DNA of 64,000 bases from contig NIVC01001209.1 of the NCBI GenBank assembly GCA_002269645.1, forward strand, positions 62,001 through 126,000. Direction: 5' to 3'. The notes beneath the pieces were generated by a model that worked only from the letters and a program-made list of their open reading frames with translations, was not told where the DNA came from and ran no database searches. The stretch is from Macrostomum lignano. Its lineage: Eukaryota. Shown piece by piece: positions 93 through 60,720 of the stretch; the stretch's first letter is position 1, and each line of letters opens with the position of its first letter. A program made the translations under genes and the position numbers.

Positions 93-3000
93 GCTGGCTT
101 CCACGCGCTGGCCGAATTCTACCAAGCCGAGACCTGCGGCGAGGCCAGGAAATTCGGCGAGCAAATTGCCCGTCTGCAGCACTCTGACCAGCTGTTCAAA
201 GAGTCGGACAAGCGGTCCGGCAGCTCCACCCAGATGCCGTTCAAAGCCGAGTGGACTAAGGCTAAGAAAGTTTTGGAGACTGTTGAGAAAGATAATAATA
301 CTATCTATCACGAGCAGGTAAGCTCACGAATGCTTCATAACCTCACGTAAAATCTAGAATAGGACGCTGACCCTCCCAGATCCTGAGTTGCTGGGCTCGC
401 TTTCCAGATCCTCAGCTGCTGGGCCAGCCTCCCACATCCTCAGCTGCTGGGCCAGCCTCCCAGATCCTCAGTTGCTGGGCCAGCCTCCCAGATCCTCAGC
501 TGCTGGGCCAGCCTCCCAAATCCGTAGTTGCTGGGCCAGCCTCCCAGATCCTCAGTTGCTGGGCCAGCCTCCTAGATCCTCAGTTGCTGGGCCAGCCTCC
601 CAGATCCTCAGTTGCTGAGCCAGCCTCCCAGATCCTCAGTTGCTGAGCCAGCCTCCCAGATCCTCAGTTGCTGAGCCAGCCTCCCAGATCCTCAGTTGCT
701 GGGTCAGCCTCCAAGATCCTCAGCTGCTGAGCCAGCCTCCCAGATCCTCAGTTGCTGGGTCAGCCTCCAAGATCCTCAGCTGCTGAGCCAGCCTCCCAGA
801 TCCTCAGCTGCTGAGCCAGCCTTCCAGATCCTCAGCTGCTAGGCCAATTCGATCCGAATTCGCTAACCTGCTCCAGGTGCCACCGGTGAACTCGCTCTCG
901 GCCATAGACAAGGCCGCCATCGCCAAGGCCATCCCCATGGCCTACCCAATGTCCGAAGGCTTCCGCGACAGCTTCGACAGGCTGGTGCCCATGCACATCC
1001 ATCAGTCCTTGCTGAACTTCGAAGCCTGCCGTAATGACGCCTGCCAGAAGGAGCTGGGCCGCCTGCGCGAGGCCACCAGCCTGATGCAGGGCGTGCTAAC
1101 CTCGCTGAACCTGCCGATGTCGCTAGAAGACTCTGGCTCGGCCAGCGTGCCGCCTTCGCTGCTTGACAAGGCCCGCGATCTGGTTGACAAAGGCGGCTAC
1201 GAGAAGTTGCGCGAATTGTCCTCTGAGAATCCCGAGCTGCACAAGCGCAATCGCGAAATACTGGACGAAGCCCTGCGCTTGCTAAACGAGGAGCAGGAGG
1301 CCGATAATAAGCTGCGGGAACAGTTCAAGGAGAAATGGCAGCGAACTCCGTCTGAACGGCTTAACGATAAACTGCGCAGCGAGGCTATGAACTTCAAGTG
1401 AGAATTTTGTCTGTTGTGAGATTCCTGCGATGCTTTTTTAGTAAAGACTCGTAACTTTTTTCGTCTGATGCTTTTCCGTCAGAGGTGTGAGATTTCCTAA
1501 GAGCTACTATCAATTATGAGATTTCCTATGATATGCTATCAATTGTGAGATTTCCAATGATATGCTATCAATTGTGAGATTTCCAATGATATGCTATCAA
1601 TTGTGAGATTTCCATGATGCTATTCAGTCTGAGGCGTGAGATTTCCCATGAGATGCTATTCAGTCTTAGACGTGAGATTTCCCATGAGATGCTATTCAGT
1701 CTGAGGCGTGAGATTTCCCATGAGATGCTATTCAGTCTGAGGCATGAGTTTTCCTATGAGATGCTATTCAGTCTGAGGCATGAGGTTTCCCATGCGATGC
1801 AACTCAGTCTGAGAGCGTGAGATTTCCCATGAGCTGCAACTCAGTCTGAGAGCGTGAGATTTCCCATGAGCTGCAACTCAGTCTGAGAGCGTGAGATTTC
1901 CCATGAGCTGCAACTCAGTCTGAGAGCGTGAGATTTCCCATGAGCTGCAACTCAGTCTGAGAGCGTGAGATTTCCCATAAGATTCTTCAGTCTGAGGAGT
2001 TGTATGCCTAAAACTGTCTAAATTTAAAAATACCAATTTTGTTGCTGCAATGCTACTAATATAGTAAACTAGGACAGTAGCTTAAAAGCGCATGTCCCGC
2101 TAAAAAACACACCCGCCAGGCAAATGCTGGAGAACGCGTCAAGCGCCGATCGCACTGTGCAACAGAAAATCGCCGACAATTCCGAGGGTCTCACCGTACT
2201 GAGCGGCGGCGAATCCAAGATCAAAGCCGCCCTACCGACAGCCGGCGGCCAAGCTGCCAGCGGCGGCTCCGGCGGCGAAGCTTTGAAAGCTGACCTGCGC
2301 AAACTCTGCCAACAGGCCGAGTCGCTGAAAGGGGAGCGAACCGGACTGGAGAAGCAGCTGCAGGACGCCATGGCCAGCCAGCCGGACGGCCTGGCCACAG
2401 AATTAAGCGACGCCATGTCCGATAGCAGCGGCCAGGCCGACGTGTCCTCACTTGTCAACGACAAGGTCAACGAGTTGCTCAGGCCGTTGAGGCAGAAAGT
2501 TGACGAACAGCTGCAACAGCAGGAGAGTCTTCTGGCTGAGGTGAGAGATGCGCGACCGGGACTTGTAGGGTTTGTTGCTTTTGAGCGCGAATTGCAAGTT
2601 GAATGCCTTAATTTGGGAAACCTGGGTGTGCTGAAAATTCCTAGTCTTTTATTCATTTAACTCCTAGCTCTGGATATCCTAGCATCAGTCTAAATACCCT
2701 AGCACCACTCTGGATACCCTAACATCAGTCTAAATACCCTAGCATCACTCTAGACACCCTAGTACCACTCTAGACACCCTAGTACCACTCTAGACACCCT
2801 AGTACCACTCTAGACACCCTAGCATCACTCTAGACACCCTAGTACCACTCTAGACACCCTAGTACCACTTTAGACACCCTAGTACCACTCTAGACACCCT
2901 AGCATCACTCTAGACACCCTAGTACCACTCTAGACACCCTAGTACCACTTTAGACACCCTAGTACCACTTTAGACACCCTAGTACCACTCTAGACACCCT

Positions 3001-5147
3001 AGTACCACTCTAGACACCCTAGCATCACTCTAGACACCCTAGCATCACTCTAGACACCCTAGCATCACTCTAGACACCCTAGCATCACTCTAGACACCCT
3101 AGCATCACTCTAGACACCCTAGCATCACTCTAGACACCCTAGTACCACTCTAGACACCCTAGTACCACTCTAGACACCCTAGTACCACTTTAGACACCCT
3201 AGTATCACTCTAGACACCCTAGCATCACTCTAGACACCCTAGCATCAGTCTAGACACCCTAGCATCAGTCTAGACACCCTAGCATCAGTCTAGACACCCT
3301 AGCATCAGTCTAGACACCCTAGCACCACTCTAGACACCCAGTCTAAACGTACCCGCTGCTCCCGCCAGGTGCAATCGAAGAACACGGAGTGGAGCGGCGG
3401 CTCGCAGAGCACAGCAGGCAGCCGGCAGGCCTGGCTCACAAAGCTCGGCAAAGCCTACGACGCGTTCATTGAGGTGCTTGGCAATTTGAAAGAAGGCCAG
3501 AAATTCTACTCCGACCTGACCGAAGTGCTGCTAAAGCACCAGAGTCGAGTCAGCGATTTCTGTTTCGCTCGTAAAACAGAAAAAGACGAATTGATGCGCG
3601 ATTTGCAGTCGGCCATCGCCAGGCAGCAGCCAGCTCAGTCCGCGCCGTCTGCCCCGGCCTTTCATGCCACCACCGCCGGCACTGGACAGGTGAAAAATTA
3701 TGTGCCTGTGCTTTTTTAGATTGTAAATCTTACAGGTAGATTCTCACAGGGTGTACAGCGGGCCTGACTTTTATCGTCAGACATGTACATTCTGCTTTAG
3801 ATATTGGCTTCACAGGCACGAAATCGTGTACAAAATTGAAAAGCCCATATGTAGTCCAGATTCTATATCTTAGAGATTCAGTAATCCATGAGCAGCTTCC
3901 AGTCTAGATTCTATATCTTAGAGATTCAGTAATCCATGAGCAGCTTCCAGTCCAGATTCTATATCTTAGAGATTCAGTAATCCATGAGCAGCTTCCAGTC
4001 TAGATTCTATAACTTAGAGATTCAGTAATCCATGAGCAGCTTCCAGTCCAGATTCTATATCTTAGAGATTCAGTAATCCATGAGCAGCTTCCAGTCCAAA
4101 TTCTATATCTTAGAGATTCAGTAATCCATGAGCAGCTTCCAGTCTAGATTCTATAACTTAGAGATTCAGTAATCCATGAGCAGCTTCCAGTCCAAATTCT
4201 ATATCTTAGAGATTCAGTAATCCATGAGCAGCTTCCAGTCTAGATTCTATAACTTAGAGATTCAGTAATCCATGAGCAGCTTCCAGTCCAGATTCTATAT
4301 CTTAGAGATTCAGTAATCCATGAGCAGCTTCCAGTCCAGATTCTATATCTTAGAGATTCAGTAATCCATGAGCAGCTTCCAGTCCAGATTCTATATCTTA
4401 GAGATTCAGTAATCCATGAGCAGCTTCCAGTCCAAATTCTATATCTTAGAGATTCAGTAATCCATGAGCAGCTTCCAGTCCAGATTCTATATCTTAGAGA
4501 TTCAGTAATCAATGAGCAGCTTCCAGTCCAGATTCTATATCTTAGAGATTCAGTAATCCATGAGCAGCTTCCAGTCCAGATTCTATATCTTAGAGATTCA
4601 GTAATCCATGAGCAGCTTCCAGTCTAGATTCTATATCTTAGAGATTCAGTAATCCATGAGCAGCTCCAGTCCAGATTCTATATCTTAGAGATTCAGTAAT
4701 CCATGAGCAGTTTCCAGTCTAGATTCTATTGTCTAAAATATTAGTAATCCATGAGAATCTTCCAGTCCAGATTCCTCAATTGTTTGAAATTGTGCGCACG
4801 TATTTAATTTGCTACAGGAGCAACAGCAACCGCAACAGCAGCAGCAGCCGCCGCCGCGCCCTCCGCCGCCATCGGTGCCGGCCTACAGCCAGCAGCAGCC
4901 GCAGCCGCAGCAGCCGCCAATGCCCGGCTACCCGATGTACCCGCCCTACTCCGGAGCTCCCGGCGGCGGCTACCCGCCAGCTTACCAGCCGCCAGCCCCG
5001 GGCTACCCGCCCGGCTATCCGCAGCAGCCGCCAATGCCCAGCTATCCAGGCTATCCCGGATATCCGGCTTACCCCGGGGCTAATCCCTATCCGACTTATC
5101 CCGGCTACCCGGCCTATCCGGGCTATCCGCAGCAGCCGCCGCGTTAA
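93..5147 (+). CDS. PDCD6IP: ALIX / programmed cell death 6-interacting protein, 3' portion (end of BRO1, V domain, Pro/Tyr/Gln-rich tail); 5' exons lie left of the window
   Basis: Exons 93-317, 877-1397, 2120-2540, 3369-3689, 4818-5147, all with GT..AG boundaries and compatible phases (0,2,0,0), giving 606 codons including TAA. Translation HALAEFYQ..KFGEQIARLQH..KDNNTIYHEQ|VP matches the ALIX BRO1 C-terminus. KEGQKFYSDLTEVLLKHQSRVSDFCFARKTEKDELMRDLQ matches the V-domain end. The tail is a YPGYP-rich proline-rich domain. AATAAA at 5369-5374. Confidence 0.93.
370..845. repeat. Minisatellite, 28-bp unit CAGCCTCCCAGATCCTCAGTTGCTGGGC, ALIX intron
   Basis: Direct tandem repetition, about 16 copies, inside intron 318-876. 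Confidence 0.95.
1510..1980. repeat. Compound minisatellite: 29-bp units grading into 36-bp GTGAGATTTCCCATGAGATGCTATTCAGTCTGAGGC, ALIX intron
   Basis: Tandem units visible; the 12-aa periodic ORF 1614-1820 confirms the 36-bp period. Confidence 0.93.
2680..3340. repeat. Minisatellite, 20-bp unit CTCTAGACACCCTAGTACCA, ALIX intron
   Basis: About 32 tandem copies inside intron 2541-3368. Confidence 0.95.
3855..4770. repeat. Minisatellite, 48-bp unit, ALIX last intron
   Basis: TTCAGTAATCCATGAGCAGCTTCCAGTCCAGATTCTATATCTTAGAGA, about 18 copies; 16-aa periodic ORF on the minus strand. Confidence 0.95.
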
Positions 5148-7610: not shown

Positions 7611-7990
7611 ACAAGTAGAGATACCCTGACATCCCTCTAGATACCCTGACATCCCTCTAGATACTCTGATATCCCTCTAGATACCCTGACATCCCTCTAG
7701 ATACCCTGACATCCCTCTAGATACTCTGATATCCCTCTAGATACCCTGACATCCCTCTAGATACTCTGACATCCCTCTAGATACCCTGACATCCCTCTAG
7801 ATACCCTGACATCCCTCTAGATACTCTGATATCCCTCTAGATACCCTGACATCCCTCTAGATACCCTGACATCCCTCTACATACCCTGATATCCCTCTAG
7901 ATACCCTGACATTCCTCTAGATACTCTGATATCCCTCTAGATACCCTGACATCCCTCTACATACCCTGACATCCCTCTAGATACCCCTGC
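7611..7990. repeat. Minisatellite, 20-bp unit CTCTAGATACCCTGACATCC, downstream of CDIPT
   Basis: About 19 tandem copies. Confidence 0.95.
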
Positions 7991-8175
7991 GTCCCTCTAC
8001 GATACCTTAAAATCCTAGATAACTGGAAGCTCTGGCAAAGACCCAGCTACATTTCTAATAGCTGCAGAAAGCAGATCATTCTATCCAGACGAAACCTAAT
8101 CATTAATCGAATGACGCGACGTTAATTAACAAAAAAGAGTTCAGCAAACACTTTAAATGTCCAATTCAATCCAAA

Positions 8176-8856
8176 TCACTCTCGCTTGTTAGCGCCAGCG
8201 GCCTGCTCGGCTCTCTCCTTGGTATCCAAGGCGGCCATGTTGACGCTGGCAACGTAGAGATGCACAGCGCTAATAGCGCTTTTAACCGCCGCCACGGGAA
8301 AGGTGAGAACGGCTAGGGTTGGCACGAGGCCAAAGCCTAGCAGTATTGGTCCCCTAGTGAAGTGCATCAGGTACAGAGCAGCATAGAACAGCTCATTACC
8401 GGCGCACATGCAGAATAGCACAACCCGACTATTGTAATAATAATATAAAATCGGATTAGAGCTCAAATCCACCGCCTTATGACTCTGAGCACCGCGCACA
8501 ATAGACGAATGCAGATGCAGCCAATGGCTGGCAATGTCCAGTGCGGCGCTCAATTGAAATGCCAGCATATATCTGGGATAGAACTGGGCTAGCACGAATA
8601 GCAGGCACATTGTGGCGCACCTGTCAGTCAGCATGTCCAGCATAGCGCCGAATTTAGTAGACTGATTCAGCAGTCTGGCCGCGTGGCCATCGAATGCGTC
8701 TAGCAGGCCGGATAGCAGATAGGCCCACGTGGCCCTCACGTGGTCGAATGGCATGTAATAGCAGGCCAGTATGGCTAACAGGATTCTGGCGTAGCCAATC
8801 AGATTGGGCACGAATAGGAATACATTCTGTTCCGAATAGTTTGACGAGCTTAGCAT
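8176..8856 (-). CDS. CDIPT: CDP-diacylglycerol--inositol 3-phosphatidyltransferase (phosphatidylinositol synthase), intronless 226-aa CDS
   Basis: Complete ATG..TGA ORF with N-terminal NVFLFVPNLIGYARI, the CDP-alcohol phosphotransferase motif DAFDGHAARLLNQSTKFGAMLDMLTDR, LDIASHWLHLH and CAGNELFY. Confidence 0.96.
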   Translation of the reverse strand: MLSSSNYSEQNVFLFVPNLIGYARILLAILACYYMPFDHVRATWAYLLSGLLDAFDGHAARLLNQSTKFGAMLDMLTDRCATMCLLFVLAQFYPRYMLAFQLSAALDIASHWLHLHSSIVRGAQSHKAVDLSSNPILYYYYNSRVVLFCMCAGNELFYAALYLMHFTRGPILLGFGLVPTLAVLTFPVAAVKSAISAVHLYVASVNMAALDTKERAEQAAGANKRE

Positions 8857-8974
8857 GGTTACAGTTGGTTGATTGCAAGCTGAAGTATGCCGTTAGGTAA
8901 TGAGTTTGCGCCTGATGCACTGCATTTCACAGCTAATCACTCAGATTTCTACTATTTGTAGCGATTCGATATCC

Positions 8975-9310
8975 ATCTTTTTGGTCTGTTGTGGATTCTT
9001 CTATCTTTTGTGGATTCTTGTTGGGCTGTTGTGGATTTTTGTTGGTCTAATGTGGATTCTTATCTATCTGTTGTGGATTCTTGTTGGTCTGTTGTTAATT
9101 CTTATCTATCTGTTGTGGATTCTTGTTGGTTTGTGGTGGATTTTTCTTGGTCTAATGTGGATTCTTATCTTATCTGTTGCAGATTCTTGTTGGTCTGTTG
9201 TGAATTATTGTTTATCTGTTGTGGATTCTTGTTGGCCGGTCTGTTGTGGAATCTTGTTTATCTGTTGTGCATTTTTTCTCCTTTCTTGGTGGTCTTTTGT
9301 TGAATCTGAC
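8975..9310. repeat. Degenerate minisatellite built on TGTTGTGGATTCTT, upstream of the CDIPT ATG
   Basis: Recurrent CTGTTGTGGATTCTT cores with variable spacers; source of the hydrophobic pseudo-ORFs 8900-9322 and 8989-9303. Confidence 0.85.
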
Positions 9311-10061
9311 GTTCTGTTGTGACATTTGTGGCTTGTAATTCCAAAGCTCATCCCTAAACAAGAGTAAAGTGATGCGACTTACAAAAAAATCAGACATTCT
9401 GCAACAGTTTTATAAGTATATCTCGTACTTTCTTATTCAAAAAGTTTGCAAGGCATTTTCCACTGCCGCTGTCACAGGAGGGCCCGCACGAACAAAGAAA
9501 ACGTGTTGCAATATCACGGATATGGACGAACAGCAGAAATTAATTACGTCAAATTTTTTGTCAAATTAGATGCTCCCCAAAAAACAGAATGCTCAAAGTA
9601 AGAAACTTCTTTGAGTGGGAAGCAAATAAAAGTCTCTACTTGCTACTCACAGTAAGAAACAAATGCAGCAATTGTCAAATTAAACTATAAATAAATTTTA
9701 CATTGTGAACATATTCGACTACATTGCAGCATTTTGAAGACAAATAAAAGAGTGAATACATATCGCAGTACGCACAGACACGCGCACCAAGTCCCGAGAC
9801 TACAACTCATTAGTTCATGCCAAGTTCCTTATGCGATTTGCATTATCAGGGGACGCCACGGCCTGAAAACAGGGAGGATGAAAGTAAAGCCATTATTTAT
9901 TAATAAGAAATCAAAACATGTAAGTTTTATATGGAGTCTTTTTTGCCGATATGTAGCGCAATAAAGTATTTTACGCTAAAATACAGATTTTTTGGGTTGA
10001 AAGAATGACAGACGCAAAGCACAGATTCAGAACGGGATGACAGACTGAATCAAGCCCATTT

Positions 10062-10185
10062 CCTAGCACACCTGTTTGCACACCTGGAACTCACAGAGCT
10101 CATATCCTAGCACACCTGGAACTCACAGAGCTCATATCCTAGCACACCTGGAACTCACAGAGCTCATATCCTAGCACACCTGGAA
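10062..10185. repeat. Short 32-bp tandem repeat CCTAGCACACCTGGAACTCACAGAGCTCATAT
   Basis: Three near-perfect units plus partial flanks. Confidence 0.85.
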
Positions 10186-10679
10186 ATTTGTGCACAGCAA
10201 AACCAGTTGCATTTCTGACAGCAATTAAAAGTAACTGGAAACTTCAAAGGCAAAGGATGCACCGAAGACGGATAGAAAGAAGTCACTGTCTAATTGAAAA
10301 TCTAATAGAGAAAAACAGTTACCTGTTGCTGGTGTGCAAAAGTGCGTCTAAACTGGTTTGGGGTGACTTGGCATTTATTTTCAACGAAGCGTTGAATAGA
10401 GATGAGTAACTATAATAGACAAGACGTATCTACTAGTTGGTTTCTTAGCATTCAACTCTTAACGATATGAGCGGACACTGAAAGCATGGGTTAATTAATA
10501 ATGTTATTGGATTAAAAAAGCACCGAAACTCAACAATTATATTATTATATTATATTATATTATAATCAGCTTACTAACAGTAGGCGGTACGTAAATCAAA
10601 TGATTAATAAACATTTAAAAACTAATTGTGCCAACAGAACAGCATCAAATAAAATGCAACAGCTATGAAAAGCACTTAC

Positions 10680-13600
10680 CGAGAATGCTCAAAGGCATAA
10701 TCAGCTTCATTAAAGGAAGCTGTGACGCAATTCGACCAACGATCCAATACCAGTCCAACAGATAAATGACTCAAATCAAAATAAGAAGTAGAATGAAACA
10801 GTATGTTCATGTACACCACTATGTATTCGGAGGCGGCAAAATAGGTGTACACTGAAATTTTTGCAGATAAATAAATGCCTTTGTTGACACTAAAAATTTA
10901 TCTAAAACAATTTTAGTTTTAAAAACTGATAATAAATCCGCTTACTAAGCCGTTCGCACAGAGCCTGATGTCGCATATAAAAGTACACAGCCAGAGCCGT
11001 GCTCAGACAGTAAACGCCAAAGCTGATCAACTTGATGTAAAACGACTGCGGACATGAATTCGTGACAACTTTGTTATATTTAGGCTTAGTCTGTTGACAG
11101 CAACTGTGAAATCCAAATTGCTTTTCTCTTATCTACCCTCTGCCTGTCTCTCCCCTACCCTCTGCCTGTCTCTCCCCTACCCTCTGCCTGTCTCTCCCCT
11201 ACCCTCTGCCTGTCTCTCCCCTACCCTCTGCCTGTCTCTCCCCTACCCTCTGCCTGTCTCTCCCCTACCCTCTGCCTGTCTCTCCCCTACCCTCTGCCTG
11301 TCTCTCCCCTACCCTCTGCCTGTCTCTCCCCTACCCTCTGCCTGTCTCTCCCCTACCCTCTGCCTGTCTCTCCCCTACCCTCTGCCTGTCTCTCCCCTAC
11401 CCTCTGCCTGTCTCTCCCCTACCCTCTGCCTGTCTCTCCCCTACCCTCTGCCTGTCTCTCCCCTACCCTCTGCCTGTCTCTCCCCTACCCTCTGCCTGTC
11501 TCTTCCTTATTATCTGCCTGTCTCTCCCTTATTATCTGCCTGTCTCTCCCCTACCCTCTGCCTGTCTCTCCCCTACCCTCTGCCTGTCTCTCCCCTACCC
11601 TCTGCCTGTCTCTCCCTTATTATCTGCCTGTCTCTCCCCTACCCTCTGCCTGTCTCTCCCTTATTATCTGCCTGTCTCTCCCCTACCCTCTGCCTGTCTC
11701 TCCCTTATTATCTGCCTGTCTCTCCCCTACCCTCTGCCTGTCTCTCCCCTACCCTCTGCCTGTCTCTCCCCTACCTCTGCCTGTCTCTACCCTACCTCTC
11801 TGCCTGTCTCCCTACTCTCTGCCTCTCCCCTACACCTGCCTGTCTCTCCCTTATTATCTGCCTATCTCTTCCCTACTCTCTGCCTCTCCCCTACCCCTGC
11901 CTGTCTCTCCCTTATTATCTGCCTATCTCTTCCCTACTCTCTGCCTCTCCCCTACCCCTGCCTGTCTCTCCTTTATTATCTGCCTATCTCTTCCCTACTC
12001 TCTGCCTCTCCCCTACCCCTGCCTGTCTCTCCCTTATTATCTGCCTATCTCTTCCCTACTCTCTGCCTCTCCCCTACCCCTGCCTGTCTCTCCCTTATTA
12101 TCTGCCTATCTCTTCCCTACTCTCTGCCTCTCCCCTACCCCTGCCTGTCTCTCCCTTATTATCTGCCTATCTCTTCCCTACCCTCCGCCTGTCTCTCCCC
12201 CGCTGCCTAGGCTACAAAAGTACAATTAGCAAGCGGCCGAAGCACGCAGACGCACTCGAGTGGAAATCAGCTGTCGATCTGTCAGCTTCTGTCGACTCCG
12301 CAGTCGGCAGCAGACTCTCAAGTGCAGCAGCATGTACACAGATGAAGATATCAGGAATATGGCGAAACAGTTGCGATGGATGGCTGAAATGAGCATATGG
12401 CAGGAGAATAGTTAATCCGAGGTACTGCCGAAAAGACTGAAGCTTAAGGATCTCAATTGGGGCAGCACTATGGCTAGTGAGCACCAAAGGACACACACGG
12501 GCAACAAAGGACACAAACCGTTGCTTCTAACGGAGACATGGGTTATCTCCAAAGGACACACAGAGGACATCAATAGACACATTCGAAAGCCATCAATAGA
12601 CGCATTCAGAAGCCATTAATAGACGCATCTGCAGAGGCCATCAAAAGACACTTGCAGAGGCCATCAAAAGACACATGCAGAGGCCATCAAAAGACACATG
12701 CAGAGGCCATCAAAAGACACATGCAGAGGCCATCACAAGACACCTGCAGAGGCCATCAAAAGACACAAGCAGAGGCCATCAAAAGACACCTGTAGAGGCC
12801 ATCAAAAGACACAAGCAGAGGCCATCAAAATACACAAGCAGAGGCCATCAAAAGACACCTGTAGAGGCCATCAAAAGACACATGCAGAGGCCATCAAAAG
12901 ACACCTGCAGAGGCCATCAAAAGACACCTGTAGAGGCCATCAAAAGACACAAGCAGAGGCCATCAAAAGACACATGCAGAGGCCATCAAAAGACACCTGT
13001 AGAGGACACAAGGACACCAAGTTATGAAACTCACGAAAATTATCAGACGAAGACACAACAGACAGGCCGAACAGAGCGGCCAATTCCAAGCAGTTGACAG
13101 CAAAATGACCGCCAGTCAAGCAGCAGTCCTGGACGCGGCGGAGGCGGCCGCAAATTTCCTGATAATAGGCCATGGCCAGGATGAGTCGAAGGGCGCAGCT
13201 AACGGTGAGGAACAGGGACCAGATCTGCTTCTCGGGGCTGGTCTCACCGACTGCAGCGCTGATTGATGGCAGGTAATTGGCGGTCTGTAATTGGCAATAA
13301 TCAGTCAGCTGCGATAGTAGATAAATATGCAATCAACGATAGCTTATTAAGTTATTACATATGAAAACTGCGACATGTCAAATAGCAAAAACGGCATTTC
13401 TAAGATTATTTAAATATCGATATTAATCATCTACAGATAGATTATTCTTTACTGACTGATAATCAGCTACTTATCGATAATCAGCTACCTACCGATAATA
13501 ATCTACGTATCGATAATTGGCTTTATATCGATGATCAGCAACATGTCGATAATTATATACACATAAGTAATTAGCTACATATTGATTAATTATCGATTCC

Positions 13601-13924
13601 TTTTCGAAAAAATTTACATATTGATTATCAGCTACATATAGATTATCAGCTACATATCGATTATCAGCTACATTAATATTAAGTATAAAAATAAATTTGG
13701 CACAGTAAACCTACAATAATCGGCTAAAGTTTTAACAAAGTTGAAAAGCATACAACTACGGCTCTCCTAACCAACTGACAGTCAATAGAAATAAGTCTCA
13801 CCTGACAGTGCGTGGCCAAACTGTGATCCGAGTGATAAGCCACCGAGTAGGTGACACAGATTGCCAAAGCCGATGCGGGCAGAACAACTGATAGAGCTGA
13901 TACTTGGCTAACACTGTAAGACAT
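10680..13924 (-). CDS. PGAP2: Post-GPI attachment to proteins factor 2 (Frag1/DRAM/Sfk1 family); terminal exon unresolved
   Basis: Exons (minus) 13924-13802, 13284-13035, 12383-12256, 11045-10946, 10851-10680, canonical GT..AG with phases 0,1,0,1 joining in frame to about 257 codons. Motifs: ATHCQ|TANYLPSISAAVG, NCLELAALFGLSVVSSSDNF|PIHRNCFAIFLISS, AVYFYMRHQALCE, YTYFAASEYIVVYMNILFH, which match PGAP2 as recalled (ATHCGVPNYLPSVS, VSSSEDFTIHENAF, YFRHNMYCE, EYTVVLTNMAFH). Exon 5 ends in phase 2 at GTAAGT. The simplest last exon is 10573-10555 (RKLIII*). Confidence 0.88.
11130..12200. repeat. CT-rich minisatellite, 22-bp unit CCTGTCTCTCCCCTACCCTCTG, PGAP2 intron 3
   Basis: Perfect left half, degenerate right half; lies inside intron 12255-11046. 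Confidence 0.95.
12630..13015. repeat. Minisatellite, 23-bp unit GCAGAGGCCATCAAAAGACACAT, PGAP2 intron 2
   Basis: About 16 copies inside intron 13034-12384. Confidence 0.95.
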
Positions 13925-14139
13925 TCTCAATTATTTTTCCAATGCTTTTCAATGCCTAACAGTAATATAATAGAATTTGCGTCTCCGAGTAGCGAACGCA
14001 ACTGAGGCATGAAAGCATGCAAATTAATTAAAAAATGGATGGTTACTTGCTAGGCTCATTCAGAACCTGTTTTGGAATTATCATTAGATAAGACCTTTAA
14101 TAAAAGTGCACATTCAGAGTAGGCCAAGTGTGCATTGAG

Positions 14140-14760
14140 ACAGAGATGGGGTGGTGGGTGGGCTAAGACTAACCTTGAGTGGATTCGAATGGCCAAGTGT
14201 ACATAGAGACGGAGACGGGGTGGTGGTGGCTGAGGCAGGTTTCAATAGACCAGTTTAGAATGGCCAAGTGTATATTGAGACGGGAATGGGGTGGTGGGTG
14301 GGCTAAGACTAACCTTGAGTGGATTCGAATGGCCAAGTGTACATAGAGACGGAGATGGGGTGGTGGGTGGCTGAGGCAGGGGTTCAATGGATCGGTTTAG
14401 AATGGCCAAGTGTATATTGAGACGGGAATGGGGTGGTGGGTGGGCTAAGACTAACCTTAAGTGGATTCGAATGGCCAAGTGTACATAGAGACGGAGATGG
14501 GGTGGTGGGTGGCTGAGGCAGGGGTTCAATGGATCGGTTTAGAATAGCCAAGTGTAGATTCAGACGGAGATGGGGTGGTGGGTGGGCTGAGGATGAGGTG
14601 AAGTGGGTTTAGATCATAGCCAAGTGTACATTGAGATGAGAATGGTGTGGTGGGTGGTTGAGGCAGGGGTTCAATGGACCGGTTTAGAATAACCAAGTGT
14701 ACATTGAGACGGTAATGGGGTAATTGGTGGCTGAGGCGGGGTGATTGGACCGGTTTAGAA
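14140..14760. repeat. Dimeric satellite, about 141-bp period made of two related ~70-bp subunits, upstream of PGAP2
   Basis: GGCTAAGACTAACC recurs at about 14161, 14301 and 14443; both subunits share AATGGCCAAGTGTA and GGGGTGGTGGGTGG. Confidence 0.88.
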
Positions 14761-16499
14761 TGGCTACTGTGCGGCGGGCATCACTAAATTTATTGAAATG
14801 AAAATGCTAGTCGTTGTTTCTGATAAACTAGCAAATATTAGCGACAAATGTTAATTAAACAAAAACTCAGCAATGCAATAAGACGAAACGCTCAAAGGCC
14901 ATGAAAAAGCGACGAATTGGCAGCGATGAGCAACTGAAAATTGTTTATATTATTATTATAAATATATGAATATTATTTGGTAAAACTTTATTCGTACAAT
15001 CAATGAATGTTTCAATAAATGATGGAGACAAAACAGTAAAATAATTTATACTACTTATATTTAAAAGAATCATACACGCACACACTGTGCTGCAAGTCTG
15101 ACTGCAATTTTAAAAAATTACTAGTGTCTACAGGTACAGGTAAAACAGACAAACGAATGGACAAAACGTACTTTAATAAAAATTATAAGCATGAGCACGC
15201 GCATGATCAAGAAGCTCAAGGTAAGTTTCAAATACTAGAAACTGTTTTTCCATCAAATCTGAGAAGGAGTGTTTATTAAAATTGAGAAAATTCCATCTTA
15301 AAACCACAGTTCAAAGATAGACGTATAGAGATGAAACCTGAACAAACACAAGCGACTACTGACTAGATAGAGTGCGGATGAGATTCCATAATGAACACTA
15401 CCGTAAATACAGGTAAAAATGGATAAGAGAAGAAAGTACTTTTGCCAGATCGCAGACCTGTTAAAACCCAAATCAATCAATCACCAACAACCATTTGAAT
15501 TTCGGTTTATAATAGACAAAATATAAATAGCTATTGCGCTAAACTGTGTACTTTAAGTAGGCAGGATGGAATACAGAAGCGGAAAAAACACTCACCATAG
15601 ATAAAAGGAAAAGAGGTAAAGCTTTTCAATTTATTACTAGTAAGTAGCATGTGTACAGAGATTACTGAAACACCCGAGTGTGAAAACTAAGCAGGTAAAT
15701 CAACTGCTTATTGAGAATAGCTAAGAAAGAGTAGGTCATTAGAGCTGATTAGTGAAATTAATAAATAAATGGCGCCTTGGCTTCTCAGTAATACAATTAG
15801 CCAATCAATCATTTTAGTACGTTTAATTAGTTAAAGCACCGATGCTTAGAAAGCTTCAGAGAAGGCGAGTCACACTACTTAGCTACCGAGCAGGAAAGTA
15901 GCATATTCCAATTTTAAAAAACGATTATTAAAGTACAGTATACCGCAAGCTAAAAAACACACTAATTTGAAGAGTTTATTTCGCAATGCGCATGAAACAT
16001 GAAGCATATTTAAAAAATATCAAAAGTGCATTTAGAAGCAGCAGAAACATGTGTACGACAGTAAGTGTGCTCGTACGAGGTCAGAGCGAAATGATTCGTG
16101 CCAGGTTTAACAATAACAGATGCTGTGCATTGGGCTACGGCTGCATATTAGTATTTTAGTTTACACATTCGTAATGAAAATAAAATTCATTTGCAAAGCG
16201 AAATATGCCCGCGTGTGTTCTGAGTTTAGCACTGAAAAACAAAAGCAAGCAGGCCTACATTGGTAAAAAAAGCAATCGTTTATATAACAAAAAAATATTG
16301 GGAAAGCAACAACAAAACGTGGAAAACCAAGTTACAAGTATATAAGTAAAGGTCAATTTTCACATCAAAGCTTAATAGTTTCTTTTATATTGATCTACGA
16401 GTATATTTTTTACCACAGCAAATATTTCTTATTTTTATTTCTATTTTTATAGATAACTACCTGTGTTTTAGCTATTAGCTTTAAATATGAAAGTCCTAG

Positions 16500-18075
16500 T
16501 CACTTATCAATAGCTCTATCTGTGAGTAGGTCATAATTATCACTATTTTATAGCTCTACCTGTGAGCAGGCCATAGTTATTACCTATTTTATAGCTCCAC
16601 CTGTGGACAGGCCACAATTATCACCAATTTTATAGCTCCACCTGTGGACAGGCCACAATTATCACCAATTTTATAGCTTCACCTGTGAGCAGGCCATAAT
16701 TATTACCTATTTTATAGCTCCACCTGTGAGCAGGCCATAATTATCACCAATTTTATAGCTTCACCTGTGAGCAGGCCATAATTATTACCTATTTTATAGC
16801 TCCACCTGTGAGCGGGCCATAATTATCACCAATTTTATAGCTTCACCTGTGAGCAGGCCATAATTATTACCTATTTTATAGCTCCACCTGTGAGCAGGCC
16901 ATAATTATCACCAATTTTATAGCTTCACCTGTGAGCAGGCCATAATTATTACCTATTTTATAGCCCACCTGTGAGCAGGCCATAATTATCACCAATTTTA
17001 TAGCTCCACCTGTGAGCGGGCCATAATTATTACCTATTTTATAGCTCCACCTGTGAGCAGGCCATAATTATTACCTATTTTATAGCTCCACCTGTGAGCA
17101 GGCCATAATTATCACCAATTTTATAGCGCCACCTGTGAGCAGGCCACAATTATCACCTATTTTATAGCTTCACCTGTGAGCAGGCCACAATTATCACCAA
17201 TTTTATAGCTTCACCTGTGAGCAGGCCATAATTATTACCTATTTTATAGCTCCACCTGTGAGCGGGCCATAATTATCACCAATTTTATAGCTCCACCTGT
17301 GAGCGGGCCATAATTATTACCTATTTTATAGCTCCACCTGTGAGCGGGCCATAATTATTACCTATTTTATAGCTCCACCTGTGAGCGGGCCATAATTATT
17401 ACCTATTTTATAGCTCCACCTGTGAGCAGGCCATAATTATCACCAATTTTATAGCGCCACCTGTGAGCAGGCCATAATTATTACCTATTTTATAGCTCCA
17501 CCTGTGAGCAGGCCATAATTATTACCTATTTTATAGCTCCACCTGTGAGCGGGCCATAATTATTACCTATTTTATAGCTCCACCTGTGAGCAGGCCATAA
17601 TTATCACCAATTTTATAGCGCCACCTGTGAGCAGGCCATAATTATTACCTATTTTATAGCTCCACCTGTGAGCAGGCCATAATTATTACCTATTTTATAG
17701 CTCCACCTGTGAGCAGGCCATAATTATCACCAATTTTATAGCGCCACCTGTGAGCAGGCCATAATTATTACCTATTTTATAGCTCCACCTGTGAGCAGGC
17801 CATAATTATTACCTATTTTATAGCTCCACCTGTGAGCAGGCCATAATTATCACCAATTTTATAGCGCCACCTGTGAGCAGGCCATAATTATCACCTATTT
17901 TATAGCTCCACCTGTGGACAGGCCACAATTATCACCTATTTTATAGCTTCACCTGTGGACAGGCCACAATTATCACCTATTTTATAGCTTCACCTGTGAG
18001 CAGACCATAATTATCACCAATTTTATAGCTCCACCTGTGAGCAGGCCATAATTATCACCAATTTTATAGCTCCAC
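16500..18075. repeat. Minisatellite, 41-bp unit GCTCCACCTGTGAGCAGGCCATAATTATTACCTATTTTATA, downstream of the MCT stop codon
   Basis: About 38 copies with two alternating variants (TATTACCTATT / TATCACCAATT). Confidence 0.95.
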
Positions 18076-18137
18076 CTGCGGGTAACAAACAAAGAAACAA
18101 TAAAAAATATAAATCCGATGAGCCCCTCGACCGCAGC

Positions 18138-21100
18138 TCAGATTCGGCTCTCGAACTCGGCCTCCCCAGTTTCCTGCTCGTCAGAAGCAGCAGCAGCAGC
18201 CGCTGTCGAAGACGCGCCGGCAGCGGCAGCGGCAGCGGCAGGGAACTGATCCTGATAAGTTGGCAGCTCGACAACCGACTGAGCGGCAGTGGCCGGCGCC
18301 ATCTGCGGAGTCTGCGGCGCCGAAAATTCGAAAGTATCCCCGCCGATGGCCAGCATAGGCAGCTGGCGACTGCCGATGGCGGAAGCTACGCCGGAACCGC
18401 CGCCGCTGCCAGACGTAGCCGTCCGTTGTCGGTTCCGACCGCGGCTCCTGCGCAGCTCTTCGCGCCGCTCCTCCCACTGGCTGAGGCGGCGAAGCGGCAC
18501 GCCGAGCAGGCCGGACAGAATCAGAAAGCAGCCGGCCAGGTAGAAGCTCAGCGAATAGTTCGGCGTCGGATCCAGCTGGTCGATCGCCGAGCCGAGCGGC
18601 GGTCCGACAACGATGCCGACGCCTTGGAACAGCAGCAGCAGGCCGTAGGCATTGGTCAGGCGGTCCAGGCCCATTAGCTCCACCACCAGGATGGTGCGCA
18701 GCGACACCCAGGCAGCTGTAAGAAAATTTGAAGAGTTGCAAAAATAATTATGCGATGATAATTTGAGGCATTTTTAATACCCGATTTCGTTTCCATGCGC
18801 AGCCGAATTCACCTGGGGCTTAGTGCACGTAATTGGGGGCTGATAAAGTATGTCAGACTGTCTAATGTCAATCTATCAAAGTATGTCAGACTGTCTAATG
18901 TTAATATATCAAAGTATGTCAGACTGTCTAATGTTAATCTATCAAAGTATGTCAGACTGTCTAATGTTAATCTATCAAAGTATGTCAGACTGTCTAATTT
19001 TCATCTATCAAAGTATGTCAGACTGTCTAATTTTCATCTATCAAAGTATGTCAGACTGTCTAATTTTAATCTATCAAAGTATGTCAGACTGTCTAATGTT
19101 AATCTATCAAAGTATGTCAGACTGTCTAATGTTAATCTATCAAAGTATGTCAGACTGTCTAAGGTTAATCTATCAAAGTATGTCAGACTGTCTAATGTTA
19201 ACCTATCAAAGTATGCCAGACTGTCTAATGTTAATCTATCAAAGTATGTCAGACTGTCTAATGTTAATCTATCAAAGTATGTCAGACTGTCTAATGTTAA
19301 TCTATCAAAGTATGTCAGACTGTCTAATGTTAACCTATCAAAGTATGCCAGACTGTCTAATGTTAATCTATCAAAGTATGTCAGACTGTCTGATGTACAT
19401 CTATCAAAGTATGTCAGACTGTCTAATGTTAATCTATCAAAGTATGTCAGACTGTCTAATGTTAATCTATCAAAGTATGTCAGACTGTCTGATGTACATC
19501 TATCAAAGTATGTCAGACTGTCTAATGTTAATCTATCAAAGTATGTCAGACTGTCTAATGTTAATCTATCAAAGTATGTCAGACTGTCTGATGTACATCT
19601 ATCAAAGTATGTCAGACTGTCTAATGTTAATCTATCAAAGTATGTCAGACTGTCTGATGTACATCTATCCTAGTATGTCAGACTGTCTGATGTACATCTA
19701 TCAAAGTATGTCAGACTGTCTAATGTTAATCTATCAAAGTATGCCAGACTGTCTAATGTTAATCTATCAAAGTATGTCAGACTGTCTGATGTACATCTAT
19801 CAAAGTATGTCAGACTGTCAGATTTACATCTATCAAAGTATGTCAGACTGTCTAATGTTAATCTATCAAAGTATGTCAGACTGTCTAATGTTATCTATCA
19901 AAGTATGTCAGACTGTCTAATGTTAATCTATCAAAGTATGTCAGACTGTCTAATGTTAATCTATCAAAGTATGTCAGACTGTCTAAGGTTAATCTATCAA
20001 AGTATGTCAGACTGTCTAATGTTAATCTATCAAAGTATGTCAGACTGTCTAATGTTAATCTATCAAAGTATGTCAGACTGTCTGATGTACATCTATCAAA
20101 GTATGTCAGACTGTCTAATGTTAATCTATCAAAGTATGTCAGACTGTCTGATGTACATCTATCCTAGTATGTCAGACTGTCTGATGTACATCTATCAAAG
20201 TATGTCAGACTGTCTAATGTTAATCTATCAAAGTATGCCAGACTGTCTAATGTTAATCTATCAAAGTATGTCAGACTGTCTGATGTACATCTATCAAAGT
20301 ATGTCAGACTGTCAGATTTACATCTATCAAAGTATGTCAGACTGTCTAATGTTAATCTATCAAAGTATGTCAGACTGTCTAATGTTATCTATCAAAGTAT
20401 GTCAGACTGTCTAATGTTAATCTATCAAAGTATGTCAGACTGTCTAATTTTCATCTATCAAAGTATGTCAGACTGTCTGATGTACATCTATCAAAGTATG
20501 TCAGACTGTCTAATGTTAATCTATCAAAGTATGTCAGACTGTCTGATGTACATCTATCAAAGTATGTCAGACTGTCAGATTTACATCTATCAAAGTATGT
20601 CAGACTGTCTAATGTTAATCTATCAAAGTATGTCAGACTGTCTAATGTTATCTATCAAAGTATGTCAGACTGTCTAATGTTAATCTATCAAAGTATGTCA
20701 GACTGTCTAATGTTAATCTATCAAAGTATGTCAGACTGTCTAATGTTAATCTATCAAAGTATGTCAGACTGTCTAATGTTATCTATCAAAGTATGTCAGA
20801 CTGTCTAATTTTCATCTATCAAAGTATGCCAGGCTTTCTAATATTCACCGATCAAAGTATGCCAGGCTGTCTAATATCCACCGATCAAAGTATGCCAGGC
20901 TGTCTGATATCCACCGATCAAAGTATGTTAGATTTCTCTATTTATCAAGGTAAGCTATCATGTTGTCTAGTATTTAATATATTCCAAGACATACCCGCAA
21001 AATAGTATGCTACTAGTATGTCATTCAATCAAGCCGCACTGAGCAGAGCATGCACAGATACGCACCGATAAATAGTCCGTAGCAACAGGCGCAACCAATC

Positions 21101-42277: not shown

Positions 42278-43055
42278 CGAAGGGTACTGCAAAAGTGTAG
42301 CCACTTGGCATTTTTAGCCATACGCTGTTTGTCGGCTATCAGTTTCATTTTCCATAGGCTTACATGACAATAAATGAATATGATGGATAATCTTGCAGCG
42401 TTCAGCCACTAGGGCCAGATAACTTCAGCACCTCTGTCCACTTTTAAAGCGGAGCTCCTGAAATTGACCGCGAATCGCGAGCATTTTCTTGCCATAATGA
42501 TTTTTTATGACTATACCGCAGCGTCCTTGATTGCCGCCAGTGCAACGAAAGGCTATCAGTGGTTTCGCAGAAGCGGCTCCATCGCCTGCGACCGTCAGCA
42601 ACTGGTTCTGTGAGTTTCTTCCTGGCTGAGACTCGTTGAAAGATAAGCGCGTACACGCCGACCTTCAACTACATGTACCACGACACCATGCAGAAACTGC
42701 AGTGGCTCGATCGTGTCCGCCAGCTGGTTGAAGCAAACAAGCAGATAATTTACAAGGAGATCGAAGCATCCCTGGCATCCATTCGCCGGCAATTGCTAAA
42801 ACTCTCACGACCACATCGGCTTGCGAATACTGATCATAGATAGGTGTGCCCCACCTGCTGCAGCCTGAGCAAAACGGGCCCGGGTCGATTGGTGCCACCA
42901 GATGCTTCAGAAGTACAGCGATATAGTGTCGAAATCGGTCGTCGACATCGTGACATGCGACAAGACTTGGGTGTACTGCTACACTGTACGAGCCAGAGCG
43001 CAAGCGCAAGTCGCAGGTTTTCAGACGAGGTGCCACCAACGAAGGTCCTACAACG
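42278..43055 (+). mobile_element. Mariner (Tc1/mariner) transposon, 5' half, transposase pseudogene
   Basis: TA at 42276-42277 followed by the TIR-like CGAAGGGTACTGCAAAAGT. Frameshifted translation fragments KLTANREHFLAIMIFYDY (mariner N-terminus), DRVRQLVEANKQIIYKEI (HTH) and IVTCDKTWVYCY (first catalytic Asp motif, IVTGDETW-like). No right TIR seen. Confidence 0.75.
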
Positions 43056-43149
43056 CTTTAACTCCCGGACGCGTCTCCTCTGGACTGATCGTTCGTGACT
43101 GCAGCCGCCGCAGCGACTACCCGACGACCACCATGCCAAGCAGCCCTGC

Positions 43150-60581: not shown

Positions 60582-60720
60582 CTGATCAAAAGGAGGGGCA
60601 GATAAGTCTGAGTTAATTTTGATTTTTTCACACGTAAGTAAATTTTAATCGAAAAAACTAATATTGAGAGAGGCGCCGAGGGCCAAGGGCGCCAGGGACT
60701 GTCTGTCTATCCGTTTAAAG

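What the first reader, a model, noticed from the sequence alone, without database searches (positions are those of the whole stretch)
8176..13924. Hidden PGAP2 gene sits directly upstream of, and co-oriented with, phosphatidylinositol synthase: candidate PI/GPI-pathway operon
Seen: a five-exon PGAP2 can be assembled in frame on the minus strand, and its last clear exon ends only about 1.8 kb before the PIS start codon on the same strand. The MCT gene upstream is also on the minus strand. Established: PIS makes the phosphatidylinositol on which GPI anchors are built, PGAP2 acts in GPI fatty-acid remodelling, and flatworms use SL trans-splicing, with operons reported in some of them. Inference: a functionally coherent polycistronic unit for PI supply and GPI remodelling. 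Pathway-linked neighbours are uncommon in animals, and I know of no description of this pair.
Basis: partly seen in the sequence, partly recalled or inferred. Interest (0 to 1): 0.72.

Follow-up and report, generated by a model that had tools for sequence, protein, structure and literature searches.

The report
Annotated flatworm PGAP2–PIS two-gene operon
Two real lipid-pathway genes (PGAP2 and phosphatidylinositol synthase) lie head-to-tail in the flatworm Macrostomum lignano, but the public genome annotation already lists them as one transcription unit, such operons hold about 15% of this animal's genes, and the pairing is absent from every other genome checked, so it is ordinary.

Summary
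The window is Macrostomum lignano assembly Mlig_3_7, contig NIVC01001209.1.

**PGAP2.** The minus-strand gene is real: its Pfam Frag1 match has E = 5.9e-42 over the full length. It is not hidden. GenBank PAA70744.1 (BOX15_Mlig028156g1) matches it exactly and adds a sixth small exon (9862-9829). The PGAP2 stop therefore lies 972 nt, not 1.8 kb, upstream of the PIS ATG.

**PIS.** The gene (8856-8176) is a single-exon CDIPT orthologue with the full CDP-alcohol motif.

**Operon.**
- In a near-identical assembly copy the two genes are named BOX15_Mlig014367g1 and g2. By the authors' convention this means two genes cut from one transcriptional unit.
- The spacer passes the published distance criterion: 674 nt after subtracting repeats, against a 1 kb limit.
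- I could not see any spliced-leader, poly(A)-site or transcription-start reads.

**Pathway meaning.**
- About 15% of M. lignano genes sit in operons.
- PGAP2 and PIS are not adjacent in three cestodes, a leech, a polychaete or a mite.
- The 56%-identical M. lignano PGAP2 paralogue has no PIS beside it.
- The biochemical link between the two enzymes is loose.

**Verdict:** an ordinary, already annotated operon candidate, with no evidence for a selected PI/GPI pathway operon.

The parts
13802..13924 (-). PGAP2 exon 1 (ATG at 13924-13922; donor GTGAGA)
   Evidence: Identical to the N-terminus of P0130. An in-frame TAA lies 9 nt upstream (read).
13035..13284 (-). PGAP2 exon 2 (acceptor ACAG, donor GTGAGT). 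It encodes the THC..NYLPSISAAVG motif.
   Evidence: The motif is invariant in alignment A2.
12256..12383 (-). PGAP2 exon 3 (acceptor TCAG, donor GTGCGT)
   Evidence: The tblastn segments agree.
10946..11045 (-). PGAP2 exon 4 (acceptor GCAG, donor GTAAGC)
10680..10851 (-). PGAP2 exon 5 (acceptor TCAG, donor GTAAGT). It encodes EY..NILFH. If intron 5 is retained, a TAA follows at 10678-10676.
   Evidence: alignment A2.
9829..9862 (-). PGAP2 exon 6 of the GenBank model (acceptor TTTCAG; encodes PWRPLIMQIA plus TAA). The tail is not conserved in relatives.
   Evidence: The gene range in L003 (4,096 nt) equals 13924-9829. The tail is unaligned in A2.
8857..9828 (-). Spacer between the PGAP2 stop and the PIS ATG (972 nt). 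It must hold the PGAP2 3' UTR and poly(A) site and the PIS 5' end. No gene is called here on either strand.
   Evidence: The three assembly copies are aligned in A1.
8976..9273 (.). 21-nt tandem repeat (about 14 copies) inside the spacer. Subtracting it leaves 674 nt. Its copy number differs between assembly copies.
9383..9398 (-). Candidate 16-nt 5' micro-exon of PIS, or a spliced-leader acceptor: TTGCAG|AATGTCTGATTTTTTT|GTAAGT. AATAAG lies at 9437 and TATAAA at 9414, just upstream. This is a candidate only.
   Evidence: acceptor and donor are kept in all three copies. The arrangement is not significant, since it appears in 9.3% of shuffles.
8880..8885 (-). CTTCAG, matching the published trans-splice acceptor motif [T/C]TNCAG. 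An exon would begin at 8879, 23 nt before the PIS ATG. The site is destroyed (TTTATG) in assembly copy L010.
8848..8851 (-). AG (8851-8850) followed by the first codon (8848) of the 5'-partial GenBank PIS CDS (SSNYSEQ...). This implies an annotated mRNA 5' end at about 8849, inside the ORF.
   Evidence: By analogy, the partial paralogue CDS begins 2 nt after a TTTCAG.
8176..8856 (-). PIS / CDIPT coding sequence, one exon, 226 aa, stop TGA at 8178-8176
18138..18707 (-). Last coding exon of the upstream MFS/monocarboxylate-transporter-like gene (context). It lies 4.2 kb from the PGAP2 ATG, or about 2.0 kb after subtracting repeats.
877..5147 (+). 3' part of a convergent ALIX/PDCD6IP-like gene (context). 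It closes the unit downstream of PIS.

Best explanation
This is an ordinary two-gene spliced-leader operon of Macrostomum lignano, and it is already in the public annotation. PGAP2 (g1) and PIS (g2) are transcribed from the PGAP2 promoter as one precursor. The precursor is resolved in two steps: cleavage and polyadenylation of PGAP2 somewhere in 9828-9400, and addition of the 35-nt spliced leader to an acceptor upstream of, or at, the start of the PIS exon. Candidate acceptors are at 9398, 8879 and 8849. The pairing of a PI-synthesis gene with a GPI-remodelling gene is most likely incidental and specific to this lineage. It is not a selected pathway unit.

What is shown:
- gene identities and structures
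- same strand, with nothing called between the genes
- spacer length
- shared transcriptional-unit number in GenBank
- lack of synteny elsewhere

What is inferred:
- the actual polycistronic RNA
- the spliced-leader site
- the poly(A) site
For: - **Same transcriptional unit:** PAA53700.1 is BOX15_Mlig014367g1 (PGAP2) and PAA53699.1 is BOX15_Mlig014367g2 (PIS). The naming convention and the TBONE cutting method are described.
- **5'-partial PIS CDS:** in all three copies it begins directly after an AG. In the PGAP2 paralogue the partial CDS begins 2 nt after a TTTCAG acceptor. This is what spliced-leader-defined 5' ends would look like.
- **Spacer:** 972 nt, or 674 nt after removing the 298-nt tandem repeat. 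The published limit is 1 kb.
- **Acceptor motif:** CTTCAG sits 23 nt upstream of the ATG.
- **Operons are common:** 15% of genes are in operons, and 75% of operons have two genes.
- **No adjacency elsewhere:** Echinococcus, Anoplocephala, Sparganum, Helobdella, Capitella and Dermatophagoides lack it. The paralogous locus L004 lacks it too.
Against: - I saw no spliced-leader, T-fill, RAMPAGE or long-read data.
- A StringTie/TACO transcriptional unit can merge neighbouring genes through read-through.
- The g2 name is visible only for one of the three assembly copies. The names for the window's own copy are masked.
- The annotated 5' end at 8849 would remove the native ATG and put the leader's AUG out of frame. 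That site is therefore either unproductive or an artefact.
- The consensus acceptor at 8879 is missing in copy L010.
- Counts of acceptor motifs in the spacer equal chance.
- A TATAAA at 9414 followed by a GTAAGT donor could equally mark an independent promoter with a 5' UTR intron.
Confidence: 0.6

Rival explanations
1. The two genes are independent. PIS has its own promoter inside the 972-nt spacer: for example TATAAA at 9414, a short non-coding first exon ending at the GTAAGT donor at 9382, and a roughly 500-nt 5' UTR intron spliced to 8879. On this view the shared transcriptional unit in the annotation reflects read-through or assembler merging.
For: - TATAAA and a consensus donor lie in the right order.
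- Promoters tested in M. lignano work within 2 kb upstream of the start site.
- Transcriptional units come from short-read assembly.
- 18% of predicted operons rest on distance criteria alone for the first gene.
- Acceptor-motif counts in the spacer are no higher than chance.
Against: - TATAAA is TTTAAA in copy L002.
- The g1/g2 split needs an experimental spliced-leader or poly(A) signal inside one unit.
- The partial PIS CDS starts right after an AG, like the trans-spliced paralogue.
- The micro-exon-like arrangement is not significant, appearing in 9.3% of shuffles.
Confidence: 0.25
2. This is a selected pathway operon. Co-transcription couples PI supply (PIS) to GPI-anchor lipid remodelling (PGAP2), and the linkage is kept because of that coupling.
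For: - Both products act on phosphatidylinositol-based lipids (general knowledge).
- They share a transcriptional unit.
- No paper describes the pair.
Against: - The adjacency is absent in three cestodes, a leech, a polychaete and a mite.
- The M. lignano PGAP2 paralogue keeps the upstream MFS neighbour but has no PIS.
- Flatworm operons are poorly conserved in general.
- From general knowledge, PIS feeds all phosphoinositide pools, and PGAP2 acts many steps later in another compartment.
- The pair was picked post hoc from about 10,000 operon genes.
Confidence: 0.1
3. The operon arose by retroposition. An intronless PIS cDNA landed downstream of PGAP2 and became expressed through trans-splicing of the host transcript.
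For: - The PIS coding sequence has no introns here. It is split into 4-6 pieces in cestodes, leech and Capitella.
- The average M. lignano gene has 4.9 introns.
- The paralogous PGAP2 locus has no PIS.
- No second PIS family turned up in M. lignano among the top 120 hits.
Against: - No poly(A) remnant or target-site duplication can be seen downstream of 8176.
- Similarity of the upstream region to the spliced leader is not above chance.
- Intron loss without retroposition would explain the same facts.
Confidence: 0.05

Closest known systems
Spliced-leader-resolved operons of Macrostomum lignano (Wudarski et al. 2017, PMC5730564; Ustyantsev & Berezikov 2021, PMC8629364)
   Same: - Same species and assembly.
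- Two co-oriented genes with nothing between them.
- Repeat-adjusted spacer under 1 kb, with a minisatellite inflating the raw distance.
- A [T/C]TNCAG motif in front of the downstream ORF.
- g1/g2 naming within one transcriptional unit.
- Two-gene size, as in 75% of operons.
   Different: - The spacer (674 nt adjusted, measured coding-to-coding) is well above the modal 100 bp.
- The annotated 5' end of the downstream gene lies inside its ORF.
- I could not inspect the spliced-leader and T-fill tracks.
Caenorhabditis elegans SL2-type operons
   Same: A polycistronic precursor is resolved by 3' end formation of the upstream gene and leader addition to the downstream gene. Operons are mostly two genes, mostly housekeeping, and usually not pathway-related (and general knowledge).
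   Different: M. lignano has one leader rather than a specialised SL2. Spacing here is several hundred nt rather than about 100 nt. No Ur-like element was sought.
Operons of parasitic flatworms (for example the cytochrome b-c1 subunit 7 - enolase pair in trematodes; PMC12582326)
   Same: [quoted passage not shown] Older annotations often fuse such loci into chimeric gene models. Here UniProt A0A1I8FLC0 fuses an MFS gene and the PGAP2 paralogue.
   Different: The PGAP2-PIS pair does not occur in the supplementary files of that study held as text. It is absent from the three cestode loci examined.
PGAP2 (post-GPI attachment to proteins factor 2; Frag1/DRAM/Sfk1 family PF10277) and CDIPT (phosphatidylinositol synthase; PF01066)
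   Same: - PGAP2: full-length Frag1 match, about 260 aa, invariant THC..LPSISA and RH..CE..Y..FA..EY..NILFH blocks, and best named hits that are PGAP2.
- PIS: full catalytic motif and 58-71% identity to CDIPT.
   Different: - The PGAP2 C-terminal tail (exon 6) is specific to this lineage.
- The PIS coding sequence is intronless, unlike its relatives.
- Neither protein has a solved structure detectable by sequence.

Membership tests
PGAP2 (Frag1/DRAM/Sfk1, PF10277) | Full-length Frag1 domain above the Pfam gathering score | tested here: met
   144.1 bits against a cut-off of 30.3, E = 5.9e-42, profile positions 5-219 of 220.
PGAP2 (Frag1/DRAM/Sfk1, PF10277) | Closest named relatives are PGAP2 rather than DRAM, TMEM150 or long CWH43 proteins. 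Length is about 250-280 aa, with no CWH43 C-terminal domain. | tested here: met
   - Named hits are PGAP2 of Toxocara and Dermatophagoides, at 34-37% identity over 83-90% of the query.
- UniProt names the M. lignano fragments PGAP2.
- The protein is 268 aa.
- The motifs are invariant in A2.
- The word-indexed search returned only 7 hits, so sampling is thin.
PGAP2 (Frag1/DRAM/Sfk1, PF10277) | Activity in re-acylation of GPI-anchored proteins in the Golgi | not testable with these tools
   This needs genetics or biochemistry.
CDP-diacylglycerol--inositol 3-phosphatidyltransferase (CDIPT/PIS, PF01066) | CDP-alcohol phosphatidyltransferase motif D-x2-D-G-x2-A-R-x8-G-x3-D-x3-D | tested here: met
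   DAFDGHAARLLNQSTKFGAMLDMLTD at residues 53-78. PF01066 scores 59.6 bits against a cut-off of 22.
CDP-diacylglycerol--inositol 3-phosphatidyltransferase (CDIPT/PIS, PF01066) | Orthology to named animal CDIPT over the full length | tested here: met
   58-71% identity over 87-98% of the query to CDIPT of arthropods, vertebrates, cestodes and annelids.
M. lignano operon (criteria of Ustyantsev & Berezikov 2021) | Immediately adjacent genes on one strand, not interrupted by an opposite-strand transcript | tested here: met
   The called genes in L001, L002, L003 and L010 run MFS, then Frag1, then CDP-OH_P_transf on one strand, followed by the convergent ALIX gene.
M. lignano operon (criteria of Ustyantsev & Berezikov 2021) | Repeat-adjusted intergenic distance below 1,000 bp | tested here: met
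   972 nt from stop to ATG, minus the 298-nt tandem repeat, leaves 674 nt. The transcript-to-transcript distance must be shorter still.
M. lignano operon (criteria of Ustyantsev & Berezikov 2021) | The downstream gene carries the spliced leader | tested here: inconclusive
   - No reads were available.
- Indirect support: the g2 name within one unit; a partial CDS that begins just after an AG, as in the paralogue after TTTCAG; and a CTTCAG motif at 8885-8880.
- Against: the motif count equals chance.
M. lignano operon (criteria of Ustyantsev & Berezikov 2021) | A single precursor RNA spans both genes | not testable with these tools
   This is only implied by the shared transcriptional-unit number in GenBank.
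Pathway (functionally coherent) operon | The adjacency is kept in related genomes or in paralogous loci | tested here: not met
   - No Frag1 homologue lies within 10 kb of PIS in Echinococcus, Anoplocephala, Sparganum, Helobdella or Capitella.
- No PIS lies within 10 kb of PGAP2 in Dermatophagoides.
- No PIS lies within 10 kb of the M. lignano PGAP2 paralogue.
- Other Macrostomum species, planarians and trematodes could not be checked.
Pathway (functionally coherent) operon | The products act in consecutive or tightly coupled steps | not tested
   From general knowledge, PIS makes bulk PI in the ER for all phosphoinositide and GPI uses. PGAP2 acts after GPI attachment, in Golgi lipid remodelling. 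The link is therefore indirect.

The most novel reading that the evidence does not exclude
Co-transcription of PGAP2 and PIS could be a selected coupling of PI synthesis to GPI-anchor remodelling. That would be a rare metabolic operon in an animal. It may have been created when an intronless PIS copy landed behind PGAP2, and it may extend upstream to the MFS transporter, whose adjacency to PGAP2 is kept in the paralogous locus.
Probability: 0.07. Interest if true: 0.5.

Novelty: already known. Interest (0 to 1): 0.17.

Why it matters
If co-transcription were shown to be conserved and functionally needed, it would be one of very few pathway-type operons in animals. It would also give a handle on how flatworms balance PI supply and GPI-anchor maturation.

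As things stand, the locus adds nothing beyond the 2017 annotation. Both genes and their shared transcriptional unit are already public. Operons of this kind number in the thousands in this species. The pairing is not conserved.

The practical value is small. The GenBank PIS model is 5'-truncated and could be corrected. The locus also shows how minisatellites inflate operon spacers in this genome.

Tried and rejected
1. **Sequence-only support for a trans-splice site.** The [T/C]TNCAG count in the spacer is 2, against 2.45 expected. The acceptor, 16 nt, donor 'micro-exon' at 9398-9383 appears in 9.3% of dinucleotide shuffles. Neither is significant, so both are kept only as candidates.
2. **Retrogene hallmark.** Similarity of the region upstream of PIS to the 35-nt spliced leader is not above shuffles. 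The window contains no exact spliced-leader fragment of 12, 14 or 16 nt, and so no spliced-leader RNA gene.
3. **Rfam scan of the whole window.** No match.
4. **PDB sequence search for both proteins.** No match.
5. **Exact look-up of the 226-aa PIS ORF in assemblies, hoping for transcript contigs.** Not on record. The 90% cluster has only three members, all from genome annotation or UniProt. Guessed N-terminal variants were therefore not searched.
6. **Name of the MCT gene (same unit or not).** The protein search with the low-complexity C-terminal exon returned nothing.
7. **Supplements and the literature.** The supplements of the two M. lignano papers held none of the gene names or locus ids. 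No paper in the library holds the three Mlig ids. None holds PGAP2, CDIPT and operon together. The held supplements of the parasitic-flatworm operon study held none of the gene or product names searched.
8. **An MFS_1 gene next to PIS in Helobdella.** It looked like shared microsynteny, but it has no detectable similarity to the M. lignano transporter exons. Rejected as coincidence.
9. **Three assembly copies as independent evidence.** Rejected. They are allelic or recently duplicated copies: coding regions are about 99% identical and the spacer about 92-96%.

Full report
**Source of the window.** The window comes from the free-living flatworm Macrostomum lignano. Six kilobases around the finding match GenBank assembly GCA_002269645.1 (Mlig_3_7), contig NIVC01001209.1, exactly. 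Two further copies of the locus exist in the same assembly, on NIVC01002509.1 and NIVC01003039.1. All three have the same gene order: an MFS transporter, PGAP2 and PIS on one strand, then a convergent ALIX gene. The copies differ mainly in minisatellite length. Their coding regions are about 99% identical and their spacers about 92-96% identical. They therefore count as one observation. The sequenced line is known to carry a duplicated large chromosome.

**The observation.** Their product matches the Pfam Frag1/DRAM/Sfk1 family end to end, with E = 5.9e-42.
- The closest named relatives are PGAP2 proteins of a nematode and two mites, at 34-37% identity.
- The blocks THC..LPSISA and RH..CE..Y..FA..EY..NILFH are invariant in an alignment with those relatives.
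- PIS is a single uninterrupted ORF of 226 aa, 8856-8176. It carries the complete CDP-alcohol phosphatidyltransferase motif and is 58-71% identical to CDIPT across animals.
- The upstream transporter gene is on the same strand.

**Two corrections.**
- The gene is not hidden. GenBank protein PAA70744.1 (BOX15_Mlig028156g1) is identical to the window's product, and UniProt calls fragments of it PGAP2.
- That RNA-seq-guided model has a sixth exon, 9862-9829, encoding a ten-residue non-conserved tail and the stop. The PGAP2 coding sequence therefore ends 972 nt, not 1.8 kb, before the PIS ATG. If intron 5 were retained, the frame would end at once at TAA 10678-10676.

**Is it an operon?** The strongest evidence is not in the sequence but in the public annotation.
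- In the NIVC01003039.1 copy, PGAP2 is BOX15_Mlig014367g1 and PIS is BOX15_Mlig014367g2, with consecutive accession numbers.
- The authors define transcriptional units as assembled precursor RNAs. Their TBONE pipeline cuts these units into genes at experimentally mapped spliced-leader and poly(A) sites. [quoted passage not shown]
- The names for the window's own PIS copy are masked by the tool. The PIS call in all three copies is nonetheless the same 223-aa, 5'-partial CDS.
- That partial CDS begins at window 8848, directly after an AG. In the M. lignano PGAP2 paralogue, the partial CDS begins 2 nt after a TTTCAG acceptor. This is what a leader-defined 5' end should look like.
- The spacer is 972 nt, or 674 nt after removing a 298-nt minisatellite. 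The published operon criterion is under 1 kb after repeat subtraction. The same paper notes that repeats inflate operon spacers in this genome.

I rate co-transcription as likely, though unproven by anything I could compute.

**Anatomy of the spacer.** On the minus strand between 9900 and 8840 there are three [T/C]TNCAG motifs:
- the exon 6 acceptor
- TTGCAG at 9404-9399
- CTTCAG at 8885-8880, which lies 23 nt before the ATG

The second motif is followed by 16 nt (AATGTCTGATTTTTTT) and a GTAAGT donor. AATAAG and TATAAA lie 15-40 nt upstream of it. This could be a leader acceptor plus a 5' micro-exon, placed just after the PGAP2 poly(A) signal.

Copy L010 has lost the CTTCAG acceptor (it reads TTTATG there, with four substitutions in 10 nt). 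It also has one T fewer in the micro-exon. With 15 nt, the micro-exon's ATG would be in frame with PIS when spliced to the AG at 8849, giving MSDFF-SSNYSEQ... (and my own reading of the frames). A 15-16-nt first exon would be dropped by transcript-to-genome aligners, which would explain the odd partial CDS.

This is an idea, not a result. The micro-exon-like arrangement arises in 9.3% of shuffles, and the motif count equals chance. A homopolymer difference in a PacBio assembly may also be an error. If the leader itself were joined at 8849, its AUG would be out of frame with PIS, so that site would be unproductive.

**Is it a pathway operon?** The evidence is against giving the pairing special weight.
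- Operons contain about 15% of M. lignano genes (10,458 genes), and three quarters of the operons are pairs.
- No Frag1 homologue lies within 10 kb of PIS in Echinococcus granulosus, Anoplocephala perfoliata, Sparganum proliferum, Helobdella robusta or Capitella teleta.
- No PIS lies within 10 kb of PGAP2 in Dermatophagoides farinae.
- Within M. lignano, the 56%-identical PGAP2 paralogue keeps an MFS gene upstream (41% identical) but has no PIS or ALIX within 10 kb downstream. The MFS-PGAP2 linkage is thus the older one, and PIS is a later or one-sided neighbour.
- Flatworm operons are poorly conserved in general.
- From general knowledge, PIS supplies PI for every phosphoinositide pool and acts in the ER. 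PGAP2 acts after anchor attachment, in the Golgi. 'Same pathway' is therefore a loose description.
- No paper in the library mentions the pair.

**Rivals.**
- An independent PIS promoter in the spacer remains possible, at about 0.25. The TATAAA at 9414 is not kept in one copy, and the annotation argues for a leader-defined boundary. Only transcription-start data can settle this.
- A selected pathway operon gets about 0.1.
- A retrogene origin for the intronless PIS gets about 0.05. PIS is split into 4-6 coding pieces in cestodes and annelids. There is no poly(A) remnant, and no leader remnant above chance.

**Verdict.** The genes and their adjacency are real. The operon reading is plausible but already embodied in the 2017 annotation. 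The functional interpretation is unsupported. Interest is low.

Noticed in passing
window 8848-8856 (L003 9992-10001; the same in L002 and L010): The GenBank PIS model is 5'-partial and starts at SSNYSEQ, three codons inside the ORF and just after an AG. A full ORF with an ATG at 8856 exists. If the spliced leader were joined at that AG, its AUG would be out of frame. The public model probably needs correction.
   Followed up: partly
L010 about 9960-9970, equivalent to window 8889-8880: One assembly copy has CATACTTCAG changed to CAAATTTATG. That is four substitutions within 10 nt in an otherwise 96-100% identical stretch, and it removes the consensus acceptor in front of PIS. The same copy has T6 instead of T7 in the candidate micro-exon, which restores the frame to the AG at 8849. 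This may be a compensatory pair of changes or an assembly error.
   Followed up: partly
window 8176-8856, compared with L005, L008, L009, L012 and L013: The PIS coding sequence is intronless in M. lignano. It is split into 4-6 tblastn segments in cestodes, leech and Capitella. The average M. lignano gene has 4.9 introns.
   Followed up: partly
L004 5674-6213 and 10001-13069; protein P0007: The MFS-transporter-then-PGAP2 order is kept at the paralogous locus (41% and 56% identity). UniProt A0A1I8FLC0 fuses the two into one chimeric protein named 'UNC93-like protein 3', as happens at polycistronic loci. The paralogue's partial CDS starts 2 nt after a TTTCAG. The older linkage may itself be an operon.
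   Followed up: partly
window 372-846, 2678-3339, 3853-4774, 7619-8006, 8976-9273, 11133-12200, 12550-13005, 13458-13673, 14122-14764, 16510-18078, 18845-20932, 21231-21997: Minisatellites of 18-73-nt units, from 4 to more than 60 copies, fill nearly every intron and spacer in the first 22 kb, including PGAP2 introns 1-3. Their copy numbers differ between assembly copies. They create long spurious ORFs on both strands.
   Followed up: partly
window 18138-33901 (minus strand): The MFS/monocarboxylate-transporter-like gene appears to span at least 15 kb. An N-terminal-looking exon ORF lies at 33488-33901, although it gave no Pfam hit at E up to 0.01. The last exon is at 18138-18707. GenBank lists the product as 812 aa.
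   Followed up: no
window 59240-60585 (minus strand): Two overlapping stop-to-stop ORFs carry cadherin repeats (PF00028, E = 3e-18 and 5e-11). They are part of a large cadherin gene at the far end of the window.
   Followed up: no
window 42869-43267 (plus strand): An ORF contains a stretch (IFIDFKKAFDSV) that resembles a reverse-transcriptase motif, in a G+C-rich patch at 42-44 kb. It gave no Pfam hit at E up to 0.01, so this stays unconfirmed.
   Followed up: partly
L012 18118-21895 (Helobdella robusta): An MFS_1 gene lies 6 kb downstream of the leech PIS on the same strand. It has no detectable similarity to the M. lignano transporter exons, so this is taken as coincidence.
   Followed up: yes
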